Source: Oculina patagonica
Taxonomy: Eukaryota
Length of the DNA stretch: 64,000 nt
Direction: 5' to 3'
NCBI RefSeq assembly: GCF_052425735.1
Contig: NC_135763.1
Span: 36,022,001-36,086,000 of the forward strand
The position numbers were made by a program, and so were the translations under genes. The notes beneath the pieces are model-generated. The model was not told where the DNA came from and ran no database searches. It worked only from the letters and a program-made list of their open reading frames with translations. Positions 10,719 through 20,509 of the stretch are shown piece by piece. Within the stretch, counting starts at the first letter, position 1, and the number at the start of each line of letters is the position of its first letter.

Positions 10719-13700
10719 ATGTCTCAACAGTCTTCTTCGCAGACGTCCAATTGCTCACTTGAGCCAATTTTATCTCAGGAGACTTTTGACCAGGTCTTCT
10801 CTAGCGTCCATGGAATTTTCGACAGTCAACAAGACTTTAACAGGTAAAACTGCAGCACACGCTAAATAAGATATTAATATCAAAAATTTGAATGTTTAAA
10901 ATACGTCAGAGCTTTGTCAAAACAACAAGACCCCATAAAATGGTATGATCTTAAATTGAGTGGAGGGGGGAGGGGTGGGAATGGGAAATATATTTTGCCC
11001 AAGTGGACCTTTTGCAGTGATAAACCTGAATGTGAGGTTCAGAATGTGATACCAATGATGTCGGCATTGAAAGAAAAAAAAATATAGAATACTTTATGGA
11101 AAGTGCGCCCGTACAGTATTTACACACAAGCTGGTGAAGTATCAGAAAACAAACGAGTGAGCTGTGCGAACGAGTTGAGATTTCTGATACAAACCAACTC
11201 GTGCATAAATACTGTACAAAGCACTTTCCATGTGGTATTGGGTTTATTATAATTTTATACGTACTGAGATTGTCATTGAATTCATTGAATGCCCCATTTA
11301 ATGAACAATTGACCCAAAACTTTAAAGCAATGTATGAAGCTAAATTGGAATTTCCAGAAGGGTGGGCAGGGTTCGCACACGCCTTGAAAGTCCTTGAAAG
11401 TCCTTGAATCTCAAAATAAAAATTCAAGGCCTTGAAAGTCCTTGAAATTGGTTTTCGGTCCTTGAAAGTCCTGGATTTTTTATTGAACGTCAAAAGGCAA
11501 TGAGAAGACCGCAAAAATAAGCGATTTATTTACTTCTTCAGCAAGGACATCAACCGTTGTTTTGGGGTAAATTTCATGAAAAAAAGTCCATGAAATTTCC
11601 AAGAAGGGTCCTGGAAAGTCCTTGAAAAGTCCTTGATTTTTTGGCCTGAAAAAGTGTACGAACCCTGGGTGGGGGGGGGGGGGTCATAGAGCAAATCCCT
11701 TCCGTGGGGGGGTATGGATATTTTCTGGGACCACACATTGTATATTCTCTCAAACGTTCTTGTGAGACCTTGTGAGAGGTGCTACCCAACACAGGTAATT
11801 TACGATGTCAGTGTAACTACTGACAGTATAGGTTTTGTATTTTTTAGGATACAAACTGAGTGTCAGATGGCGCCAACAATTATTCAACTAACTGATGAGA
11901 ATATACACGGTATGTGTGACGTATATGCAGGGCGTCAAATTGCGCCTAATACAGGCGCCAATGCGACTAAATTTTTCACTTTGGCGACCAAATCCTGAAA
12001 GTTGGTCGCCAAATTGGCGACTAGGATCATATAATCGACCTCAAATCGCATCGGATCACTTAATTTATCAAAAACTGCATAACTCGTAAAAAAATCGCAC
12101 AGGGTGAGCAAAGTACAAAATAACTTCTTGCTTTATCTAAAGATCTTACATTTCAGCTAAATATATTAGTTTTGAAGGTTATTTACCTGTCCAAAACTGT
12201 AAGAATACATCTGATATGGTTTGCAATCGAGCGTTGCTATTTTGGGCAGGCAACTTCCTATTACACTTTCAACTTAGCCACACAAAACAGCCACACAATG
12301 AATTTGCTTTCTATCTTTGCTCTTTGTATTGTATTGAAGTTTACAAGGAAAAATGGTTCAACTCAAAATGTTTAAATCCATACATGAAGTCAAAAGCATC
12401 GGCAAACGACTGTCAAACATTGTGTAGTGCTCGTTGCGTACATGACACGTGCGCCTATTTTGACGCGGTCAGCGGTTTCATCTGGTACTTCATGTAATGT
12501 CACCAAAAGTCTTCCTAGTTCTTGTGCACAAAAAGCCATTCAAGATTGAAATAAATGCAAATGTGATGAAAATAATCTATTTTAAAGGGTCTATCTAGTA
12601 AAACGACAAAATGAGAAGTGTTTTATTTCTTTTTTAAAAAAATGGCGACCAAATTTTTGGAATTGGCTACCATTTTGGCATACTTAGGAGCCAAGTGGCT
12701 ACTGGGAAAAAAAGTTAATTTTACGCCCTGATATGTGTGCCTGACCAGTGTCAGTGTCATGATTATGTGAATGAATTTAATCATGAATTCAATCAAAATA
12801 TTTGTGCTTAAAGGGGCTAGGTCCCAGTATTTTAGGAAATTCTATTTAATGTCATTAATTTAGAGCTCTTAACTTCAAATTGGCAGAGCAAAAACTTGTC
12901 TTTTTTTGCCAAAATCACGACCACATTACAAACAAGGATGGTTTTTGAGCATTGTAAATGACACTTTAATACAAATTGAGATAAAAAAGTTGGGCCAACG
13001 TTTTTCAAGCTTAGCCAAATGCAATGGGTTTTAATCTAATCAAATTTTGCCCATCCATGCCGCTGTTTGGCCTTTCTGTGTTTCTTTTGAGTTCTTCTAC
13101 AGTTTTAAGCCGTTATTGTGACATTCAGTTAATTCTATAACCAGTTGGTCAGAAATTGCCTAAAATTGCAGGGAATTAATAAAACAGGATTTTTTAGGCA
13201 TGAAACAGGGTTCGAAACTTGCGACCTTGTCAATCCAGTAGGCAAGTGCTAACTTAATTTCCATCCCGCGATGAATGGCATCTTTTGGTTGGTACCTAGA
13301 CCTTGTGTGGTTGTTACACATGTACATCTGTATTATAAATTATATTTATTTACCAGTACATGTGAACTGCATGTGCATGTAGATTAATTCAATCTTGTGT
13401 GATTTCAGAAAATGTGGAGATGACCTTGAACTGTGTAGGTGTCATGAGGCCGGAGGTAAAACACTTTCGATGCTTATAATATGTTATTTGAATCGTCTTT
13501 ATATAGTATCAAGTCAACATTGCCTCTTTTAAGTGGCCAATCAGCTTGCCTGTCTACAGTGCTGCCAATAACAGTCGGTCATCGGACACTGGCCGACCAA
13601 AATTTGTTCATGTCTGACAAAATCCCAAGTGTGGTCAGACATGATGTCCGGAAGGTAAATCATTTTACGGTAACAATGAATAAAATTAAACCTTTTGGAT

Positions 13701-16700
13701 TTAGTGATGTCCAACCAAAATTTTGTTTTGTTCGACCATGATGGTGTCTTAGTAGGACATATATGTCCTTTCAAGTGAAAAAAATTATTTGCAGCCCTGT
13801 GTCTATAATGTCTAATTTATTTTTTCTCAACAGGTTGAATTTCCCCCATTTATGCCAGACCATAGCTTTAGAATAGATCTCAAGCAAGAACCTACATGTA
13901 GTACATCTTTCAAACGAGAACCAGTCGACAATTCGAGATTCATCTCATCTACGATGACCACACCACCCCCTGAACAGCCTATTCCGCAGCCCTTAATAGT
14001 GTGTAATACTGATTTCCCCGGCACGTATGGATTTGACTTGGGCTTTGAGGAAGAGAAGGGTCCCGTGACCAAGTCAGTGCATTGGACGTACTCTCCAGCC
14101 CTAAAGAAACTGTTTGTTAAAATGCGGTGTATTGTTCCCCTTCGGTTCCGCCTCCAAGGTAAGAAGATCATGATTATATTTTTTATTAAATATTAATTTC
14201 TCCTCTTTTGTACAATTCTCATTTCTGTGCCTTGTAAATGACTTCCACGTTTTCTTTGTTGCAGTTTTTCCCCCAGCTCCTGGCTTCTATGTAAGAGTTG
14301 TTGTGATTTATAGACAGCCGGACCATTATAGGGAAATTGTTGAACGGTGCCCGAACCACATCACAAAACACAAGGATGGTTAGTTTTCATTTTCTTGAAT
14401 CTCGACTTACATGTACTTCTTGAGATGCAAAGGGTGTAAAGGAAAACAGAATTCCTAGGGTGCCCTTTGGGCAAGTGTGCAAGCCATTGTGTGCTAGGTA
14501 GAAACTAGCCTAGCCTTACTTAATGCCCTTATTTGATGGGAAAAAATAATACATATCGCCCAGCAAGCAGGCCATTGATCAATAAAAATTATATCCCTCT
14601 AGCCACTGGCTTTTGGACAATATACACAGTGTATATTTACATTATGCACTTTCTTTGCATGCTGACATAGTATTTCAGCAGTGAAGCAGGTCTCTTAAGC
14701 TTATAGAGTCAGTGTGTAATTCTACTGGTCCTCTAGTATAGCAGTTGGTGTTGTGTTTGTGGCTAGGGGAATAATATTGTTCCTGTTAGTTAGTCTATAT
14801 GTATGTCTTAATACATTATATTGTACATGGAAATCACATCTAGATTTACTGTTGTTTTCAGGCCATCATGCACCAAAACATTTGTTGCGTTGTGAAAATC
14901 CCAGAACAGATTATGTCACCTGCCCTGAAACTGGGAGGCATAGTTTAAAAATACCTCTGGAGGCACCTCAGGGTAAGTCTGAATCTCAATCAGCACTTTT
15001 TTGTTTGGAAACAAGTTTAATTTTTAGCTTGCCCTACAGACAGTTGTCAAAAGTGTGATTGCCATGGGTAGTTGCACGCTTGTCATAGGTTAGCCCATCC
15101 TATGGGATGATCCAGCCCAGGATTGATGATCCAAGATCAGTCAGACTATGGTACATGAATTGAACTGATGAATCCACTCTGGGCAAGGATTCATTGGAGT
15201 CTTTGATCATCCCAAATGAATGCACCCTTACTATGCAGACAGCTTGCAATTTCCTGGGCCCTTGTGCAATAGAAAGTTTCTTTCCCAGTTGACAGGTCTG
15301 CTTGTGGATGACAAGAAATTTTTTTTCAAGTTCCAAAACAGTGAAAGACAGAAATTCAGAAGCCAATAAGGAATATCCACACAAATACATGTATATAGAA
15401 CTCCTTAGTAATGTCTGAGCAGTGTAATATTCATATCTCAGTGTAATATCTCACATCTCAGTGGATGTTGGACTCAGCCATTGTTTTATTACTTAATTCT
15501 TGTTCATTTGACTTTATATTTTGTAGCTGGCAGTGACTTTGTGACAAACATGTTTCAGTTCATGTGCTTCAGTTCATGCCCTGGGGGTTTGAATAGACGA
15601 CCTATCCTTGTGGTTTTCACACTGGAGTATAAGTAAGTCTTGGGGTAGAATATGTTATAGCCTTACACTTATAATTATTTTGAACTCTGTAAGTGTACAT
15701 GTAGGTAATGCATGTAACTCTGCATGTAGGTAATGTATTTTGAATTCCTTGTTTTCCAGCAATATGGTATTGGGAAGGAAAGCGCAAGATATACGCATAT
15801 GCGCATGCCCTGGGAGAGACAGAGGAATTGAGGAAAATGCCGAAGCAAAACGACAGTCAAACCAGCCAGCAGCAACTGCCGCCAACCCTCAAACTCCAAA
15901 TGTGACTCCGCCCCCTACCCCTCAGATATCATCAACCCCTCGCACTCCTCCTCCCGAGGAGCCAACAACATCCACTGGTGCAGAAGAAACAAATCATGTT
16001 CAAGTACCGAAACTAACAAAAAAGCGATGTAAGTGTGGAGTTCCATGTACATTTCCAAAAGGTAAAGGCTGTAGCTTAAAGCGACCTACTCTCCCTGGAT
16101 GAGAGGCTACACGTACATGTAGTCCATCACAGGGTACCCCGCAGAATTTTGTCTGGTTGGCCTAGCAGTTTTCTACTGTCTTTAAATACCCCTGCGTGGA
16201 GAGAGGCAGTAGTATGCTCAGTGATCTATAATGTTTGTTTACCAATTGTAGGACTTGTTTTGAGCTTTGTGGTATGTTTAGAGAAAAAAACAAAACAGAT
16301 TGATTGGCAGCAAGGCTGGTACAACGGGAGGAGGGCAAGATTTATTGGCCCATATTTCAACTAGAAGACTAGCTCTGCTAGGTGAAATATGGGCCAATAA
16401 ATCTTGCCCTCCTGCCGTTGTACCAGCCTTGCAATCAATCTGGTTTTATTAGCACTTAGAGTGACGTCTGGACGTCTGGTACGAGCATTTCTTGACAAGA
16501 GATCCGGCAGCAGACTAGCCAAGCAGTTTTTTCCTTCACTGCGTGGTCCCCTGCATCCAAACAGTTTTTGTTTAGAGAGTTTTACCATGTGGCATTTTTG
16601 TGTGCAGAAAAATAATTTGAGTTGTGGTATCCTGTCGACCTAGAAACACAAATGTTTGAAACCCAAATTTCCATCTGAAAATACCTTAGTACATCCATGT

Positions 16701-19700
16701 TAAATTTTGCCCCCAAACTCCCCTAGGGCTAAAAGCATATTCTTAGTGAGTTGATTCTTTTTATCCTATTTCAGGGAGTGTCAGTTTTAATAACCACATT
16801 CTGAATTAGCCACTTTCATGCTAACCTTATTCTGTTTAATCTTGTTTGAATCCTCAGCACATTCCATCATGTCATCTGGTTTTGAGGTCAGGTCATTATC
16901 AGCTAATCGGATGAAACGAATGAAGACTCATGAAGATGAGGAGATTTTTACAATACAGGTTGGTTATATCTTAGTTAACAATTTTGTGGAAAATATAATT
17001 ATTCACTTGGTCCTGTTCAGTTTAATGGTTTGAAGTAGACAAGAAGTCGCAGAACTCTGTCTCTTAGGGGTGTTTTTTTTTTCACAATTCTGGAATGAGA
17101 ATGGCCAGAATGTGAAATGTGCATGTTTTTCTATTCCACATTTCTATTTCGTAATGGACAAAACGCCATTCCTTCCATTCTGCTCCCAGGGGCAGAATTA
17201 ACAGAATGTTGCGAATGAAAATCAAAGTTGGCTGGTAGAAGGCATAGCCCGTGATTTGACGGGATGTGTCTCCTCTCCTTTGCAAAAAGCACTGCCAGAA
17301 CATTTGGCAAATCCACAAGACTCCATACTTCTTTTCCTCTTCTTAGAAAAATTGCTGTAACTTGAGTCTGTTTTTCCTTTGTTGCAGGTTAAAGGTCGTG
17401 ACAAATATGAGATGCTCCTGAAAATTAAAGAGGGTCTGGATATTATGGACATGGTTCCACAAGCACAAATAGATAATTACCGTGCAAGGTGAGTCTCTAC
17501 ATTCAGAACTACTGATGTAACATTAATGCAGAATTTGTGCATCTTTGGCCCTTAAAATACATTTTTGTCAATGCACATACATTACATTTCAGCGAAAAAT
17601 AATTAAATTGTACCAGAGGTTTTGCAAGATTTCTTCAATACAGCATGATTTGCTAATATGGCCTTTAACGTTTTCATTGAATCCTTGTTTTGAATTCTCT
17701 TAGATTGAGCAGTAAAAAGTACTCACCATAAGGCACCTTGTCCCGGAATAAAATCCTTCCCCTGCAAGGGGCAGGGGCGGATACCCCCCAAGCCTCCTGT
17801 TGAGGGTCCATAATAGGCTTCGGCAGTCCCCCATCCCGCCACCCTTTTTAGCCCTTATCCCACCCATTTTGATGAGTTTGATCCTACATCCTGCCCTCAA
17901 TTTAAGAATATCCCACATCCCACCTAGCAAAAAGAACACATCCCAGTCCCGCCAAGACAATTTCATCCTGCCACTAAAATATTGGTATCGGGGATTCCGC
18001 CTTGATTTTAAGCCTTATCCTGCATCCTGCCAGACCTATGTTCCTCCTTGGTATCCCCAAACTTACACGACTTGGGACCCTCAGGACCTATAGCAGCAAC
18101 TTCTAGTGGTATCTCTGTGATCTGAAGCTTCAGAACAAAAACAAAGCAAATTCATGTTTTTCTTATGACATTTTTATGAATTAAACTGTGCCACTGATAA
18201 ATGATTTATTTTGTTGAAACCAACAGCTGCCCCCCTTGTGGGAGATTGACGAGTTCCAGGTCTTCACAAAGAGAGAATTCTCAGAATGTAAATTCACAAA
18301 ATTCTGATTCACAAATCTCTACAGATTCTCAGCCAGTAGGTCTTCTTTTGTCTTTTTACTTCCTGGCTATAACTCTAATTCTTTTGTTAAGTGTGTTGGT
18401 TGAAATAAGGTACCGTAGTTAAAATTCATGAGGCTTTGTAACTAAATGATTTTATTATTGGTTTACTGGTCCACTGGTATTTTGTATTGTTAATTGGTTA
18501 ATGTTATTATTGATTGGCTGACTGACAGACAGACAAACAGATGGACAAATGTGCAGGTCTGTCTTACTAACAGTCTGAGTATACCTAGAACAAAGAAAAT
18601 CCTGCCAAATGTGGTAAAACATTCGTGTACAAACTCTTTGATATACAAGAAATTGGAAGACAATTATTTTGGATTGTGATGATATAGTACAAAATACCAA
18701 AGGTGAAAATAGACAACATTATGCAAAAGCTAGTACGCCGTAAAATTCTGGTTATAAGCCCCCCACTTTATAAGCCCACCCCCCGGTTATAGGCCCATCT
18801 TTCTGGGAAAAAAATACAATACATCCGATTATAAGCCCCCCGGATATAAGCCCCCCTTTGCCGGATGATAGTACTGAAAAAGGCTAAATGTTGCTTTTTT
18901 ATGCGTTTTTAACTTAATACCGTATTTTGATCAACACTCCTGTGGCTCTTTTCGAAACGTTTTTTTTCATTCCGCTTTTTAGCCTTCCCAGATTGCATTT
19001 CACATAAATTTCACATTTTCCACTAAAAAAGGGGCAGTAGCCCAGAAACGTATATGTTTCCATCGTTTGGGGTTCCTTGGAAACATTATACTACCATCAG
19101 GCGCATTTTTCATTTTCATTTTAATTATCGTTTCAATTCTCCCGGAATAGCCCCTCTGTATAAGCCCACCCAAAATCCCTTACGAAGTTGTATAAGCCCA
19201 CGGCTTATAACCAGAATTCTACGATATGTAGTAATAATTATCAGCCCAAACACCTGAGGCAAGATAGATACCTGAATTCTGAGCACAGTAACTCCAGTCA
19301 GTGTCACGCCCAGCTCTTCTCTTGTAGCTTCACTTTCTCATGTCTTGAAATTTATCTGTTATCTGGGGTACATTTCATTGGTTTCTAGTTTGTGCTAAGT
19401 TTATTAACAATAAAATCAGCACAAACTAGAAACCAATGAAAATGTACCACATGTACCATTATCACAGTAGTGTGTGACCTTATTGCCTGGATGGAAGTAT
19501 ATCACACTCAGAATTCAGGGTTTAAGTAGTAAATTTATTAATCATCTGTTGTCATAGGATGAACTGGATGGTACTCCACCCATTTCTCAACTTTCGCGCT
19601 CAGACTCTGGCTCCTCGTACCAGTCTCCCACGTCCTCCCAGCAGAGTTCTGGAGGAGGGACTGGGATCAATGCTGTCAGATTTACCCTGAGACGAACTGT

Positions 19701-19731
19701 GTCATTAGACAAGAAGGGTTTCCAGCAATAG
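10719..19731 (+). CDS. TP63: p53/p63/p73-family transcription factor (TAp63-like, no SAM domain), 12 coding exons, 547 aa
   Basis: Exons 10719-10843, 11848-11909, 13409-13455, 13834-14158, 14265-14378, 14862-14972, 15527-15632, 15760-16028, 16858-16958, 17388-17488, 18227-18335, 19558-19731. All GT-AG, phases consistent, 1644 nt total. TA: [13 protein letters not shown]: [63 protein letters not shown]. Tetramerisation: [40 protein letters not shown]-terminus: [12 protein letters not shown]. The symbol denotes the pre-duplication p53/63/73 homologue. Confidence 0.95.
11084..11240. mobile_element. Palindromic MITE in p63-like intron
   Basis: TACAGTATTTACACACAAGCTGGTGAAGTATCAGAAA is mirrored by TTTCTGATACAAACCAACTCGTGCATAAATACTGTA. 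Confidence 0.6.
11367..11667. mobile_element. hAT-like MITE with 6-bp TSD, nested in an older repeat
   Basis: TIR CAGGGTTCG/CGAACCCTG, flanked by GGTGGG on both sides. Internal AAAGTCCTTG repeats. Confidence 0.75.
11928..12730. mobile_element. hAT-like non-autonomous element with 5-bp TSD
   Basis: TIR CAGGGCGT/ACGCCCTG. TSD ATATG. Subterminal TGGCGACCA repeats. Confidence 0.75.
13557..13799. mobile_element. hAT-like MITE with 6-bp TSD
   Basis: TIR CAGTGCTGC/GCAGCCCTG. TSD TGTCTA. Confidence 0.7.
16296..16443. repeat. Near-perfect ~70-bp-arm palindrome (foldback MITE) in p63-like intron
   Basis: GCAAGGCTGGTACAACGG..GGAGGGCAAGATTTATTGGCCCATATTTCA is mirrored by TGAAATATGGGCCAATAAATCTTGCCCTCC..CCGTTGTACCAGCCTTGC. 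Confidence 0.85.
18738..19224. mobile_element. Tc1/mariner (Tc2/pogo-like) MITE
   Basis: TIR CGTAAAATTCTGGTTATAAGCC / GGCTTATAACCAGAATTCTACG. Internal TATAAGCCC repeats. Confidence 0.75.
19271..19519. mobile_element. Foldback MITE
   Basis: Ends CCTGAATTCTGAG/CTCAGAATTCAGG. Central palindrome CATTGGTTTCTAGTTTGTGCT...AGCACAAACTAGAAACCAATG. Confidence 0.7.
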
Positions 19732-20509
19732 CTTGGTCAAAAGGCATCTAGGAGTGATCAAATTAACACGTATGATTGATTGTTGATATTATGGCATAAC
19801 ATAAATGTATTATGTTGCCAAGACAGGCTGAAGGATTTGTAATAGTCGCTGTTCATACATAATTATTATTGCATTGAGCTGCGTTGTTTTTGAGAAATAC
19901 TTCTTGCAGTATTTTTGTGTACACTACTGTAAGCTTAGTTGGTTCCAGTTTTAATAGACCTTGATAATTATTTCAAGGTGATGTTTCAGAATGAGAGAAT
20001 TCACATGCAGCTCTTAAAGAGATGTTTATTTTTCAAAGAGCTGAGGAAAGATTAGATTATTGTTATATTCAAGTTTTTGTTATTGAGAAGCAAATGCTTC
20101 TTACCAAGAAAATGATCAATAAAACATTTACTTGTCTTGAAAATGACACTGGTTAAATAATTTTTCAGTACGAAAGTGTTTCAATATATATTATCATTAC
20201 TTCACAAATGTAAATGATTTTTACAAAACCAGTGTGTGATTTTAAGTTTTAAAACCAACTGAGCTCTTTCTCCTTAAAGCTGGTATCGGTTTTCAGCATT
20301 TTAAAGCTCTTTTCCTTTGATGGATCAGTACTATAAAACTTTATCAGTCGATGCTACAATAATGATATCAAATAAATGCCCAATGATTGGTAAATACGTT
20401 TTGGTAATTTTATTGATGTCACTGGTTACCATAGCAACAGTAATAGCGGTTAAAAACACCCTTAATTTTGGCTTCAAGTGCTTAAAAAAATTAATGTGCT
20501 AAAATTTAA

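What the first reader, a model, noticed from the sequence alone, without database searches (positions are those of the whole stretch)
19591..19707. CHK2-priming LxRxxS followed by an S+3/S+6/S+9 CK1 relay directly before the TI strand
Seen: L-S-R-S-D-S(19606) is an LxRxxS consensus. It is followed by Ser at +3, +6 and +9, and the F of FTL at +25. Established: human p63 has LLRTPS582 with CK1 sites S585/S588/S591/T594 and FTL about 21-23 residues after S582. Inference: the kinase logic and spacing are kept although the surrounding sequence has diverged.
Basis: partly seen in the sequence, partly recalled or inferred. Interest (0 to 1): 0.75.

Follow-up and report, generated by a model that had tools for sequence, protein, structure and literature searches.

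The report
Coral p63 tail keeps phospho-switch motif
The last exon of a stony coral's p63-type gene carries, just before its self-inhibiting end piece, a strongly conserved serine loop that lines up with the CHK2/CK1 switch that activates human p63 in damaged egg cells. This suggests the switch may be much older than vertebrates, but no phosphorylation has been shown.

Summary
Window 19591-19608 (+) reads L-S-R-S-D-S. Ser follows at +3, +6 and +9, and the F of FTL lies at +25. The stretch lies in the last coding exon (19558-19731) of the SAM-less p63-type gene of Oculina patagonica (NCBI model, 558 aa). Spliced RNA contigs confirm the reading frame.

In one sequence the pattern is weak evidence. 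A four-member SxxS run appears in 55% of shuffles of this Ser-rich tail, and the full pattern in 0.4%.

The comparative evidence is strong:
- The block is nearly invariant in seven scleractinian genera, while synonymous sites are saturated (pN 0.078, against 0.22-0.28 in neighbouring linkers).
- An unsupervised alignment puts it in register with the bilaterian and vertebrate p63/p73 motif (hydrophobic-x-R-x-x-S, then S/T every third residue).

Caveats:
- S+6 is always followed by Pro.
- Position +12 is Gln.
- The vertebrate VG/SE kinetic residues are absent.
- Acropora palmata has Pro at +3.
- Nematostella keeps only S0 and +3.
- The invariant D-S-G-x4-S also fits a beta-TrCP degron.
- The kinases were not tested.

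Verdict: a probable homologue of the vertebrate p63 phospho-activation loop, a new member of a known kind. Another note of this scan (s1-278840) covers the same gene.

The parts
19591..19608 (+). L-S-R-S-D-S: basophilic priming consensus (hydrophobic -5, Arg -3, acceptor Ser S0 = residue 518 of the 558-aa NCBI model)
   Evidence: L/M, S, R, S, D and S are invariant in Acropora, Montipora, Porites, Pocillopora, Stylophora, Oculina and one unnamed coral. Nematostella has LSRTSS.
19615..19617 (+). Ser +3 (S521), first candidate CK1 site
   Evidence: Ser in all corals except Acropora palmata, which has Pro (P0273/P0279). Ser in Nematostella and all bilaterian p63/p73 examined.
19624..19629 (+). 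Ser +6 (S524) followed by invariant Pro +7: second relay position, also a proline-directed-kinase type site and the distal Ser of a D-S-G-x4-S pattern
   Evidence: The S-P pair is invariant in all scleractinian sequences. Bilaterians have S/T at +6 in 14/18 lineages but no Pro.
19633..19638 (+). Ser +9 and Ser +10 (S527, S528). +9 corresponds to the decisive third CK1 site (S591) of vertebrates.
   Evidence: Invariant in corals. S/T at +9 in 15/18 lineages. S528 is nearly invariant in the 37-sequence alignment.
19588..19650 (+). Whole conserved PAD-like block (Q512 to S532), predicted disordered
   Evidence: pN 0.078 with pS 0.77 over 7 coral cDNAs, against pN 0.22-0.28 in neighbouring linkers. 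AlphaFold2 pLDDT is below 50 for residues 509-537.
19651..19671 (+). Gly-rich spacer (GGGTGIN) between the Ser block and the TI strand. Its length varies (Acropora has 3-5 extra Gly/Ser).
19672..19707 (+). TI (transactivation-inhibitory) strand [12 protein letters not shown]
   Evidence: 9/12 identical to vertebrate AVRFTLRQTISF. 92% invariant columns and dN/dS about 0.008 in corals. Predicted beta-strand 538-551 with pLDDT about 78. Deleting the last 34 aa of Nematostella nvp63 raises transactivation (PMC1964547).
19558..19731 (+). Last coding exon (57 codons plus TAG stop at 19729-19731)
   Evidence: GT..AG joint 18335 to 19558 in contigs of three runs. 100% match to P0077 residues 502-558. 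Single copy in the genome.
18227..18335 (+). Linker exon (starts with the conserved CPPCG, then a variable Ser/Gln/Asn-rich stretch). It is needed to keep the last exon in frame.
   Evidence: Joints 17488 to 18227 and 18335 to 19558. Direct joining of 17488 to 19558 would shift the frame. 100% match to P0077 residues 465-501.
17388..17488 (+). Oligomerisation-domain exon
   Evidence: Pfam P53_tetramer on the orthologues. Helices 435-451 and 456-465 in the model.
13834..16028 (+). Five exons with the p53-type DNA-binding domain: 13834-14158, 14265-14378, 14862-14972, 15527-15632 and 15760-16028 (alternative donor at 16061)
   Evidence: Pfam PF00870 matches. GT..AG joints. Exon solving.
16858..16958 (+). 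Exon between the DNA-binding domain and the oligomerisation domain
   Evidence: Joints 16028 to 16858 and 16958 to 17388.
10719..13455 (+). N-terminal coding exons 10719-10843 (ATG, SQ cluster, TA helix), 11848-11909 and 13409-13455 (predicted beta-hairpin 52-74, at the position of vertebrate TA2)
   Evidence: Exact solution against P0077. Secondary structure.

Best explanation
The stretch is the phospho-regulatory loop of the C-terminal autoinhibitory tail of the coral's single p63-type protein (Oculina patagonica, 558 aa, no SAM domain). It is the homologue of the vertebrate TAp63alpha 'PAD' loop.

Shown:
- It is coding and spliced as read.
- It is predicted disordered.
- It lies 25 residues before a TI beta-strand nearly identical to the vertebrate one.
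- It is under strong purifying selection in stony corals.
- It aligns in register with the p63/p73 motif (hydrophobic-x-R-x-x-S, then S/T at +3, +6, +9) found from corals to birds.

Inferred mechanism:
1. After DNA damage a basophilic checkpoint kinase (CHK2, or CHK1/MK2-like) phosphorylates S518 (S0).
2. This primes CK1 for S521 (+3). The relay then runs to S524 (+6) and S527 (+9).
3. Alternatively S524-Pro is phosphorylated by a proline-directed kinase and itself primes S527.
4. The added negative charge next to the TI strand loosens its pairing with the acidic N-terminal strands and the oligomerisation domain, as shown by charge-swap mutants in mouse p63, and releases the active tetramer.

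My odds: about 0.8 that it is a conserved, functional phospho-acceptor loop homologous to the PAD, and about 0.35-0.4 that the exact CHK2-then-CK1 order operates in corals.
For: Frame and gene:
- Searches give the exon chain with GT..AG joints and a 100% match to the NCBI model.

Conservation:
- Searches show the block L/M-S-R-S-D-S-G-x-x-x-x-S-P-x-S-S-Q-x-S invariant in 7 genera of both coral clades.
- One search gives pN 0.078 at saturated pS 0.77, like the DBD (0.109) and OD (0.098). Linkers have 0.22-0.28.
- One search gives Ser invariance of 9/10 against 6/22, p=0.0017.

Homology in register:
- Searches are the unsupervised alignment.
- One search gives S/T occupancy peaks at +6, +9 and +12.
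- Nematostella LSRTSSNAS matches hemichordate MMRTGSNAS.

Structure:
- The loop 509-537 is disordered and the TI strand 538-551 is confident.
- An N-terminal hairpin at 52-74 is the only other non-DBD strand.

Literature:
- The mammalian mechanism (PMC7730327, PMC9091270, 10.1101/681007).
- Charge repulsion between the TID region and acidic TA2B (PMC4876613).
- The TID is functional in Nematostella nvp63 (PMC1964547).
Against: - No phosphorylation data exist for any cnidarian p63.
- LxRxxS is shared by many basophilic kinases.
- S+6 is always followed by Pro, which marks proline-directed sites. CK1delta has a hydrophobic +1 pocket that holds Val in p63 (10.1101/681007).
- +12 is Gln, so there are at most three CK1 sites.
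- The VG and SE residues that give the vertebrate loop its delayed kinetics are absent.
- Acropora palmata has Pro at +3 in two independent sources.
- Nematostella lacks S/T at +6 and +9.
- The invariant Asp -1 and Gly +1 are not explained by a CHK2/CK1 model.
- The coral loop lacks the Arg pair (R595/R598) that pairs with TA2B in mouse.
- The complex prediction of tail plus N-terminus gave no verdict.
Confidence: 0.55

Rival explanations
1. The conserved core is a phosphodegron. D-S-G-x-x-x-x-S (D517-S518-G519...S524) is the DSG(X)4S variant recognised by SCF-beta-TrCP in CDC25A. Phosphorylation of S518 and S524, the latter by a proline-directed kinase, would then target the protein for destruction rather than, or as well as, activating it.
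For: Asp -1, Ser 0, Gly +1 and Ser +6 are invariant in every scleractinian sequence, while +2, +3, +4 and +5 vary. DSG(X)4S is a documented beta-TrCP degron variant (PMC10487276). In CDC25A this degron is also fed by checkpoint-kinase signalling (Jin et al. 2003, cited in PMC10487276).
Against: DSG is absent from Nematostella (T-S-S-N-A-S) and from all bilaterian p63/p73 at this place. It would therefore be a coral-specific overlay on an older motif. It does not explain the invariant S+9, S+10, Q+11 and S+13. No binding data exist.
Confidence: 0.15
2. It is a conserved multi-kinase phospho-cluster with a different logic. Possible inputs are proline-directed phosphorylation of S524-P, a GSK3-type 4-spaced series (-2, +2, +6, +10, +14), or 14-3-3 binding to R-S-x-pS. 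The output need not be opening of a closed dimer; it could be localisation, partner binding or DNA affinity.
For: The 4-spaced Ser series is fully present. The S-P pair is invariant. R-S-D-S resembles the first part of the 14-3-3 mode-1 motif (my own knowledge). A. palmata breaks the 3-spaced relay at +3.
Against: Montipora foliosa and M. capricornis have Ala at +2, which breaks the 4-spaced series. Across phyla the periodicity is 3, not 4: +6, +9 and +12 are high, while +8 and +10 are low. Position +2 is Ser or Ala, not the Pro of the 14-3-3 motif.
Confidence: 0.25
3. It is a chance pattern in a Ser-rich disordered linker with no specific function.
For: A four-member SxxS run appears in 55% of shuffles of the tail, and +3/+6/+9 given S0 in 7%.
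Against: There is near-invariance over seven coral genera with saturated synonymous sites. Ser conservation is far above that of other Ser-rich linkers of the same protein. The motif is in register across phyla.
Confidence: 0.03

Closest known systems
Vertebrate TAp63alpha phospho-activation loop (PAD): CHK2 at S582, then CK1 at S585/S588/S591/T594, upstream of the TI domain (Tuppi 2018 as cited in PMC7730327; Gebel et al., 10.1101/681007)
   Same: It holds the same place in the protein, directly N-terminal to the TI strand. It has the same hydrophobic-x-R-x-x-S start, S at +3, +6 and +9, a similar distance to FTL (+25 against +23) and a disordered loop. The TI strand is 9/12 identical.
   Different: There is no SAM domain before it. 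It has three rather than four relay sites (+12 is Gln). Pro follows the second site instead of Val-Gly. It has Ser-Gln instead of Ser-Glu after the third site, and no Arg pair between the loop and the strand. It has extra invariant Asp -1 and Gly +1 and more serines (+2, +10, +13, +14). Published conservation was stated only 'from fish to mammals'.
Nematostella vectensis nvp63 C-terminal TID (Pankow & Bamberger 2007, PMC1964547)
   Same: It is the orthologous SAM-less cnidarian gene, with the TID encoded by the two 3' exons. It shares CPPCG after the oligomerisation domain and SQLSR before the acceptor Ser. The inhibitory function of the last 34 residues was shown experimentally.
   Different: Nematostella has only S0, +3 and +4. 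It has no S/T at +6 or +9, no DSG and no S-P. It has a GRR pair instead of the Gly run, and FSL lies at +18. The 2007 paper predates the CHK2/CK1 model and does not discuss these sites.
CDC25A DSG(X)4S beta-TrCP phosphodegron (PMC10487276)
   Same: It has the same D-S-G-x4-S spacing, lies next to a checkpoint-kinase type site, and is embedded in a run of serines.
   Different: No evidence of beta-TrCP binding exists. The motif is limited to stony corals among the p63 proteins examined.
Vertebrate p73 C-terminal loop (LLRSSSNASSISIGSS before AVHFRVRHT)
   Same: It has the same motif and register, showing that the pattern predates the p63/p73 split.
   Different: p73 is reported not to form the closed dimer (PMC7730327). 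Keeping the motif therefore does not by itself prove the switch.

Membership tests
p63-type PAD-TID regulatory tail | Belongs to a p53-family protein with a DBD and a p63/p73-type oligomerisation domain | tested here: met
   PF00870 exon matches. PF00870 plus PF07710 on all orthologues. Two OD helices in the model.
p63-type PAD-TID regulatory tail | C-terminal TI beta-strand with the V-R-F-T-L-R core | tested here: met
   [12 protein letters not shown] at 19672-19707. Invariant in corals. Predicted strand 538-551.
p63-type PAD-TID regulatory tail | Hydrophobic-x-R-x-x-S priming site in the loop just before the TI strand | tested here: met
   LSRSDS at 19591-19608. Conserved in 7 coral genera and Nematostella, and aligned with vertebrate LLRTPS.
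p63-type PAD-TID regulatory tail | Four S/T at +3, +6, +9 and +12 (CK1 relay) | tested here: inconclusive
   +3, +6 and +9 are Ser in Oculina and +12 is Gln. +3 is Pro in Acropora palmata. Nematostella has only +3.
p63-type PAD-TID regulatory tail | Val-Gly after the second CK1 site and Ser-Glu after the third, which set the delayed kinetics (10.1101/681007) | tested here: not met
   The coral has Pro-Thr after +6 and Ser-Gln after +9.
p63-type PAD-TID regulatory tail | SAM domain between the oligomerisation domain and the loop | tested here: not met
   Spliced joints leave only a 36-codon linker exon. No SAM Pfam hit on any cnidarian orthologue. The alignment shows the SAM as a gap in corals.
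p63-type PAD-TID regulatory tail | Actual phosphorylation by CHK2 and then CK1 | not testable with these tools
   Needs kinase assays or phosphoproteomics. The presence of CHK2 and CK1 genes in this genome was not checked here; it is assumed from their pan-eukaryotic distribution.
p63-type PAD-TID regulatory tail | Closed dimer that opens to a tetramer on phosphorylation | tested here: inconclusive
   The complex prediction of 2 x tail plus 2 x N-terminus scored 0.25, below the mark of 0.34, so it gave no verdict. The monomer model shows the TI strand and an N-terminal hairpin as the only non-DBD strands, but their pairing was not output.
SCF-beta-TrCP phosphodegron, DSG(X)4S variant | D-S-G followed by Ser after four residues | tested here: met
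   D517-S518-G519-x4-S524, invariant in corals. The variant is documented for CDC25A (PMC10487276).
SCF-beta-TrCP phosphodegron, DSG(X)4S variant | Phosphorylation-dependent binding to beta-TrCP and shortened half-life | not testable with these tools
   No data.

The most novel reading that the evidence does not exclude
The checkpoint-kinase-primed CK1 relay that fires the 'spring-loaded' TAp63alpha switch in mammalian oocytes was already present in the cnidarian-bilaterian ancestor. It works in a protein without a SAM domain. Stony corals have added a proline-directed input (S-P) and a DSG(X)4S degron, so one loop would couple activation to later destruction.
Probability: 0.3. Interest if true: 0.75.

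Novelty: new member of a known kind. Interest (0 to 1): 0.55.

Why it matters
The 2022 review of p63/p73 structure lists it as an open question whether the autoinhibition of mammalian TAp63alpha is conserved in invertebrate p53-family proteins that guard germ cells (PMC9091270). A related review contrasts mammals with invertebrates on this point (PMC7730327).

Published conservation of the phospho-sites was stated only from fish to mammals (10.1101/681007). The present data show that the priming site and the 3-residue serine register sit before the TI strand in corals, hemichordates, echinoderms, molluscs, a brachiopod and vertebrate p63/p73, and that corals keep the loop under strong selection.

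This gives concrete residues to mutate (S518, S521, S524, S527) in a small SAM-less protein. It also offers natural variants as controls: Acropora palmata with +3 Pro, Montipora with +2 Ala, and Nematostella without +6/+9. For coral biology it points to a candidate damage sensor in germ-cell or stress-induced apoptosis.

Tried and rejected
1. Joining the oligomerisation exon (end 17488, phase 2) directly to 19558 would put the last exon in another frame. I considered a hidden alternative acceptor inside the exon that would skip LSRSDS. Both ideas were rejected when the contigs showed the intermediate exon 18227-18335.
2. Complex prediction with two copies of residues 425-558 and two copies of residues 1-62 scored 0.25, under the mark of 0.34. 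That is no verdict and is not used as evidence either way.
3. A search with the C-terminal 63 residues alone found only the same seven coral clusters. A search with Nematostella nvp63 found no further cnidarians: no octocorals, zoantharians or other anemones with a complete tail. 'Anthozoa-wide' conservation therefore could not be tested beyond Scleractinia plus Nematostella.
4. The Desmophyllum pertusum model (P0080) switches frame inside the last exon and was left out.
5. No run was on record as RNA. I used contigs whose GT..AG joints show that they come from spliced RNA. Depth, strand and expression level cannot be read from them.
6. A GSK3-type 4-spaced series as the main logic is weakened by Montipora Ala at +2 and by the cross-phylum 3-periodicity.
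7. I did not look for CHK2, CK1 or beta-TrCP genes in this genome, because no tool-derived query sequence was at hand.
8. Literature searches for p63 with CK1 or Chk2 and Nematostella, and for invertebrate autoinhibition, found no paper describing these sites outside vertebrates. The library holds open-access papers only.
Full report
WHAT IS THERE

The window is G000:C6:36022001-36086000 of a 529-Mb coral genome. Pfam P53 matches lie at window 14005-15657.

Six-frame reading and contigs from four public runs, laid on 13830-19800, give a chain of GT..AG joints:
- 14158 to 14265
- 14378 to 14862
- 14972 to 15527
- 15632 to 15760
- 16028 to 16858
- 16958 to 17388
- 17488 to 18227
- 18335 to 19558

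The NCBI protein 'cellular tumor antigen p53-like isoform X2 [Oculina patagonica]' (P0077, 558 aa) matches the exons at about 100%. The N-terminal exons solve exactly as 10719-10843, 11848-11909 and 13409-13455.

The finding therefore lies in the last coding exon (19558-19731) of the coral's p63-type gene. The intermediate exon 18227-18335 matters, because without it the last exon would be read in another frame.

There is no SAM domain. The oligomerisation exon is followed only by a 36-codon linker exon and then the 57-codon tail. The genome has two other p53-family loci, but the tail exon is single copy.

THE OBSERVATION

The tail reads L-S-R-S-D-S (L at 19591, acceptor Ser S0 at 19606, residue 518). 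Ser follows at +3, +6 and +9, and the F of FTL is at +25.

The human reference points are confirmed by papers:
- CHK2 at S582, and CK1 at S585, S588, S591 and T594, with the third site decisive (PMC7730327, PMC9091270).
- FTL is F605/T606/L607 (PMC3087504), so F is at +23.

CHANCE

The tail between the oligomerisation domain and the TI strand is 36% Ser/Thr. Results from shuffles:
- A four-member [ST]xx[ST] run appears in 55% of shuffles.
- A hydrophobic-x-R/K-x-x-S/T site appears in 13%.
- The full pattern appears in 0.4%.
- Given S0, S/T at +3, +6 and +9 appears in 7%.
- A 4-spaced series (-2, +2, +6, +10, +14) is also present.

One sequence alone would not carry the claim.

CONSERVATION IN CORALS

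Searches returned orthologues from Acropora, Montipora, Porites (complex clade), Pocillopora, Stylophora, Oculina (robust clade) and one unnamed coral, plus Nematostella.
- In all corals the block [L/M]-S-R-S-D-S-G-x-x-x-x-S-P-x-S-S-Q-x-S-[S/T] is invariant, while the preceding linker is highly variable.
- With cDNA contigs of six other corals, the block has pN 0.078 at saturated pS 0.77.
- That compares with the DNA-binding domain (0.109) and the oligomerisation domain (0.098). The linkers have 0.22-0.28.
- Nine of ten serines of the block are invariant, against 6 of 22 in the other Ser-rich linkers of the same protein (Fisher p=0.0017).

Two natural variants are informative:
- Montipora foliosa and M. 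capricornis have Ala at +2.
- Acropora palmata has Pro at +3, in two sources.

HOMOLOGY WITH THE VERTEBRATE LOOP

An unsupervised MAFFT alignment of 37 full-length proteins puts coral L, R, S0, S+3 and S+6 in the same columns as the following, with the SAM domain appearing as a gap in cnidarians:
- vertebrate p63 (LLRTPSGASTVS)
- vertebrate p73
- hemichordates, echinoderms, molluscs and a brachiopod

Nematostella LSRTSSNAS bridges corals and hemichordate MMRTGSNAS.

I anchored 18 lineages on R-x-x-S-x-x-[ST] only. S/T occupancy was then:
- 14/18 at +6, 15/18 at +9 and 10/18 at +12
- 1/18 at +5, 2/18 at +7 and 4/18 at +8

The 3-residue register is thus an old feature of the p63/p73 tail. These lineages are related, so the counts are not independent trials.

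STRUCTURE

An AlphaFold2 model built with that alignment gives:
- residues 509-537 as disordered (pLDDT below 50)
- the TI stretch 538-551 as a beta-strand (pLDDT about 78)
- a TA helix at 20-35
- an N-terminal hairpin at 52-74, with alternating hydrophobic and acidic residues, where mouse TA2 lies

In mouse, TA2B and TID strands form a sheet that covers the tetramerisation interface, and added negative charge near the TID opens the dimer (PMC4876613). The coral model is compatible with that. Strand pairing was not output, however, and the complex prediction gave no verdict. In Nematostella, deleting the last 34 residues raises transactivation (PMC1964547), so the tail is inhibitory in a cnidarian.

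WHAT DOES NOT FIT A SIMPLE CHK2/CK1 COPY

- LxRxxS is not specific to CHK2. MK2 is used to prime S582 in vitro (10.1101/681007). That CHK1, PKD, CaMK and AMPK-type kinases share the motif is my own knowledge.
- S+6 is always followed by Pro, the mark of proline-directed sites (PMC9876800 for the classes). CK1delta holds Val589 in a hydrophobic +1 pocket (10.1101/681007).
- pS-P-x-S is a known priming arrangement in LRP6 PPPSPxS motifs (motif named in PMC12095580; the CK1 role is my own knowledge). S+6 could therefore be a second, independent primer for S+9.
- +12 is Gln.
- The VG and SE residues that set the vertebrate kinetics are missing.
- A. palmata lacks S+3, and Nematostella lacks +6 and +9.
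- Asp -1 and Gly +1 are invariant in corals. With S+6 they give D-S-G-x4-S, the CDC25A-type beta-TrCP degron (PMC10487276).
- p73 keeps the motif although it is reported not to form the closed state (PMC7730327).

VERDICT

The loop is very probably a functional phospho-acceptor element homologous to the vertebrate PAD (about 0.8). That it is read by CHK2 and then CK1 to open an autoinhibited state is plausible but untested (about 0.35-0.4). A coral-specific degron or another kinase logic may be layered on it.

NOVELTY

The cnidarian TID has been known since 2007, and the PAD mechanism since 2014-2020. Its conservation was stated from fish to mammals. The 2022 review lists conservation of the autoinhibition in invertebrates as an open question (PMC9091270). 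I found no paper describing these sites outside vertebrates, though only the open-access library was searched.

I file it as a new member of a known kind, of moderate to good interest because it makes that open question directly testable.

Noticed in passing
window 17388-17801 and 18227-18768: Transcript forms may exist that lack the regulatory tail. One contig (run X10) runs through the donor at 17488 into the intron; that form would end ...NYRAR-stop right after the oligomerisation domain. Contigs of X6/X7 and NCBI isoform X4 (P0255, 530 aa) run through the donor at 18335 and end in a hydrophobic 28-residue tail. This recalls the alpha versus beta/gamma C-terminal isoforms of vertebrate p63. 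Unspliced pre-mRNA cannot be excluded.
   Followed up: partly
window 18227-18244: A C-P-P-C-G motif directly after the oligomerisation domain is invariant in all stony corals and present in Nematostella and Actinostola. It is absent from bilaterian p63. It is a CxxC-type motif (redox or metal site?) whose function I cannot explain.
   Followed up: no
window 19573-19587: T-P-P-x-S just upstream of the priming site resembles the Fbw7/Cdc4 phosphodegron core TPPxS (my own knowledge). G-T-P-P is kept in robust-clade corals and the unnamed (JGI) coral, T-P-P in Porites; Montipora has T-P-Q and Acropora P-S-Q-S.
   Followed up: no
window 16028/16061 and 13831/13834: There is an alternative donor 33 nt apart at the end of the exon starting at 15760: the long form has an 11-residue Cys-rich segment ([12 protein letters not shown] replaces Ser; net +10 aa) (NCBI X2), while the contigs use 16028. 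There is also a NAGNAG acceptor giving plus or minus one Gln at 13831/13834 (isoforms X1 and X2).
   Followed up: partly
protein P0080 (Desmophyllum pertusum 'Tumor protein 63'): The deposited model changes reading frame inside the last exon. It reads ...LSRSDS and then the +1 frame, so it lacks the TI strand. This is likely an assembly or annotation error rather than a real loss.
   Followed up: no
window 18830-19229 and 14630-14829: Very high contig depth and many loose ends in the introns mark abundant, transcribed repeats. The peptide-like 'YKP...' frames are of a common coral repeat.
   Followed up: no
proteins P0202, P0210 (bird p73): Vertebrate p73 keeps L-[LI]-R-S-S-S-N-A-S-S-I-S-I-G-S-S, about 24 residues before its TI-like strand. 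This is the same register as p63.
   Followed up: partly
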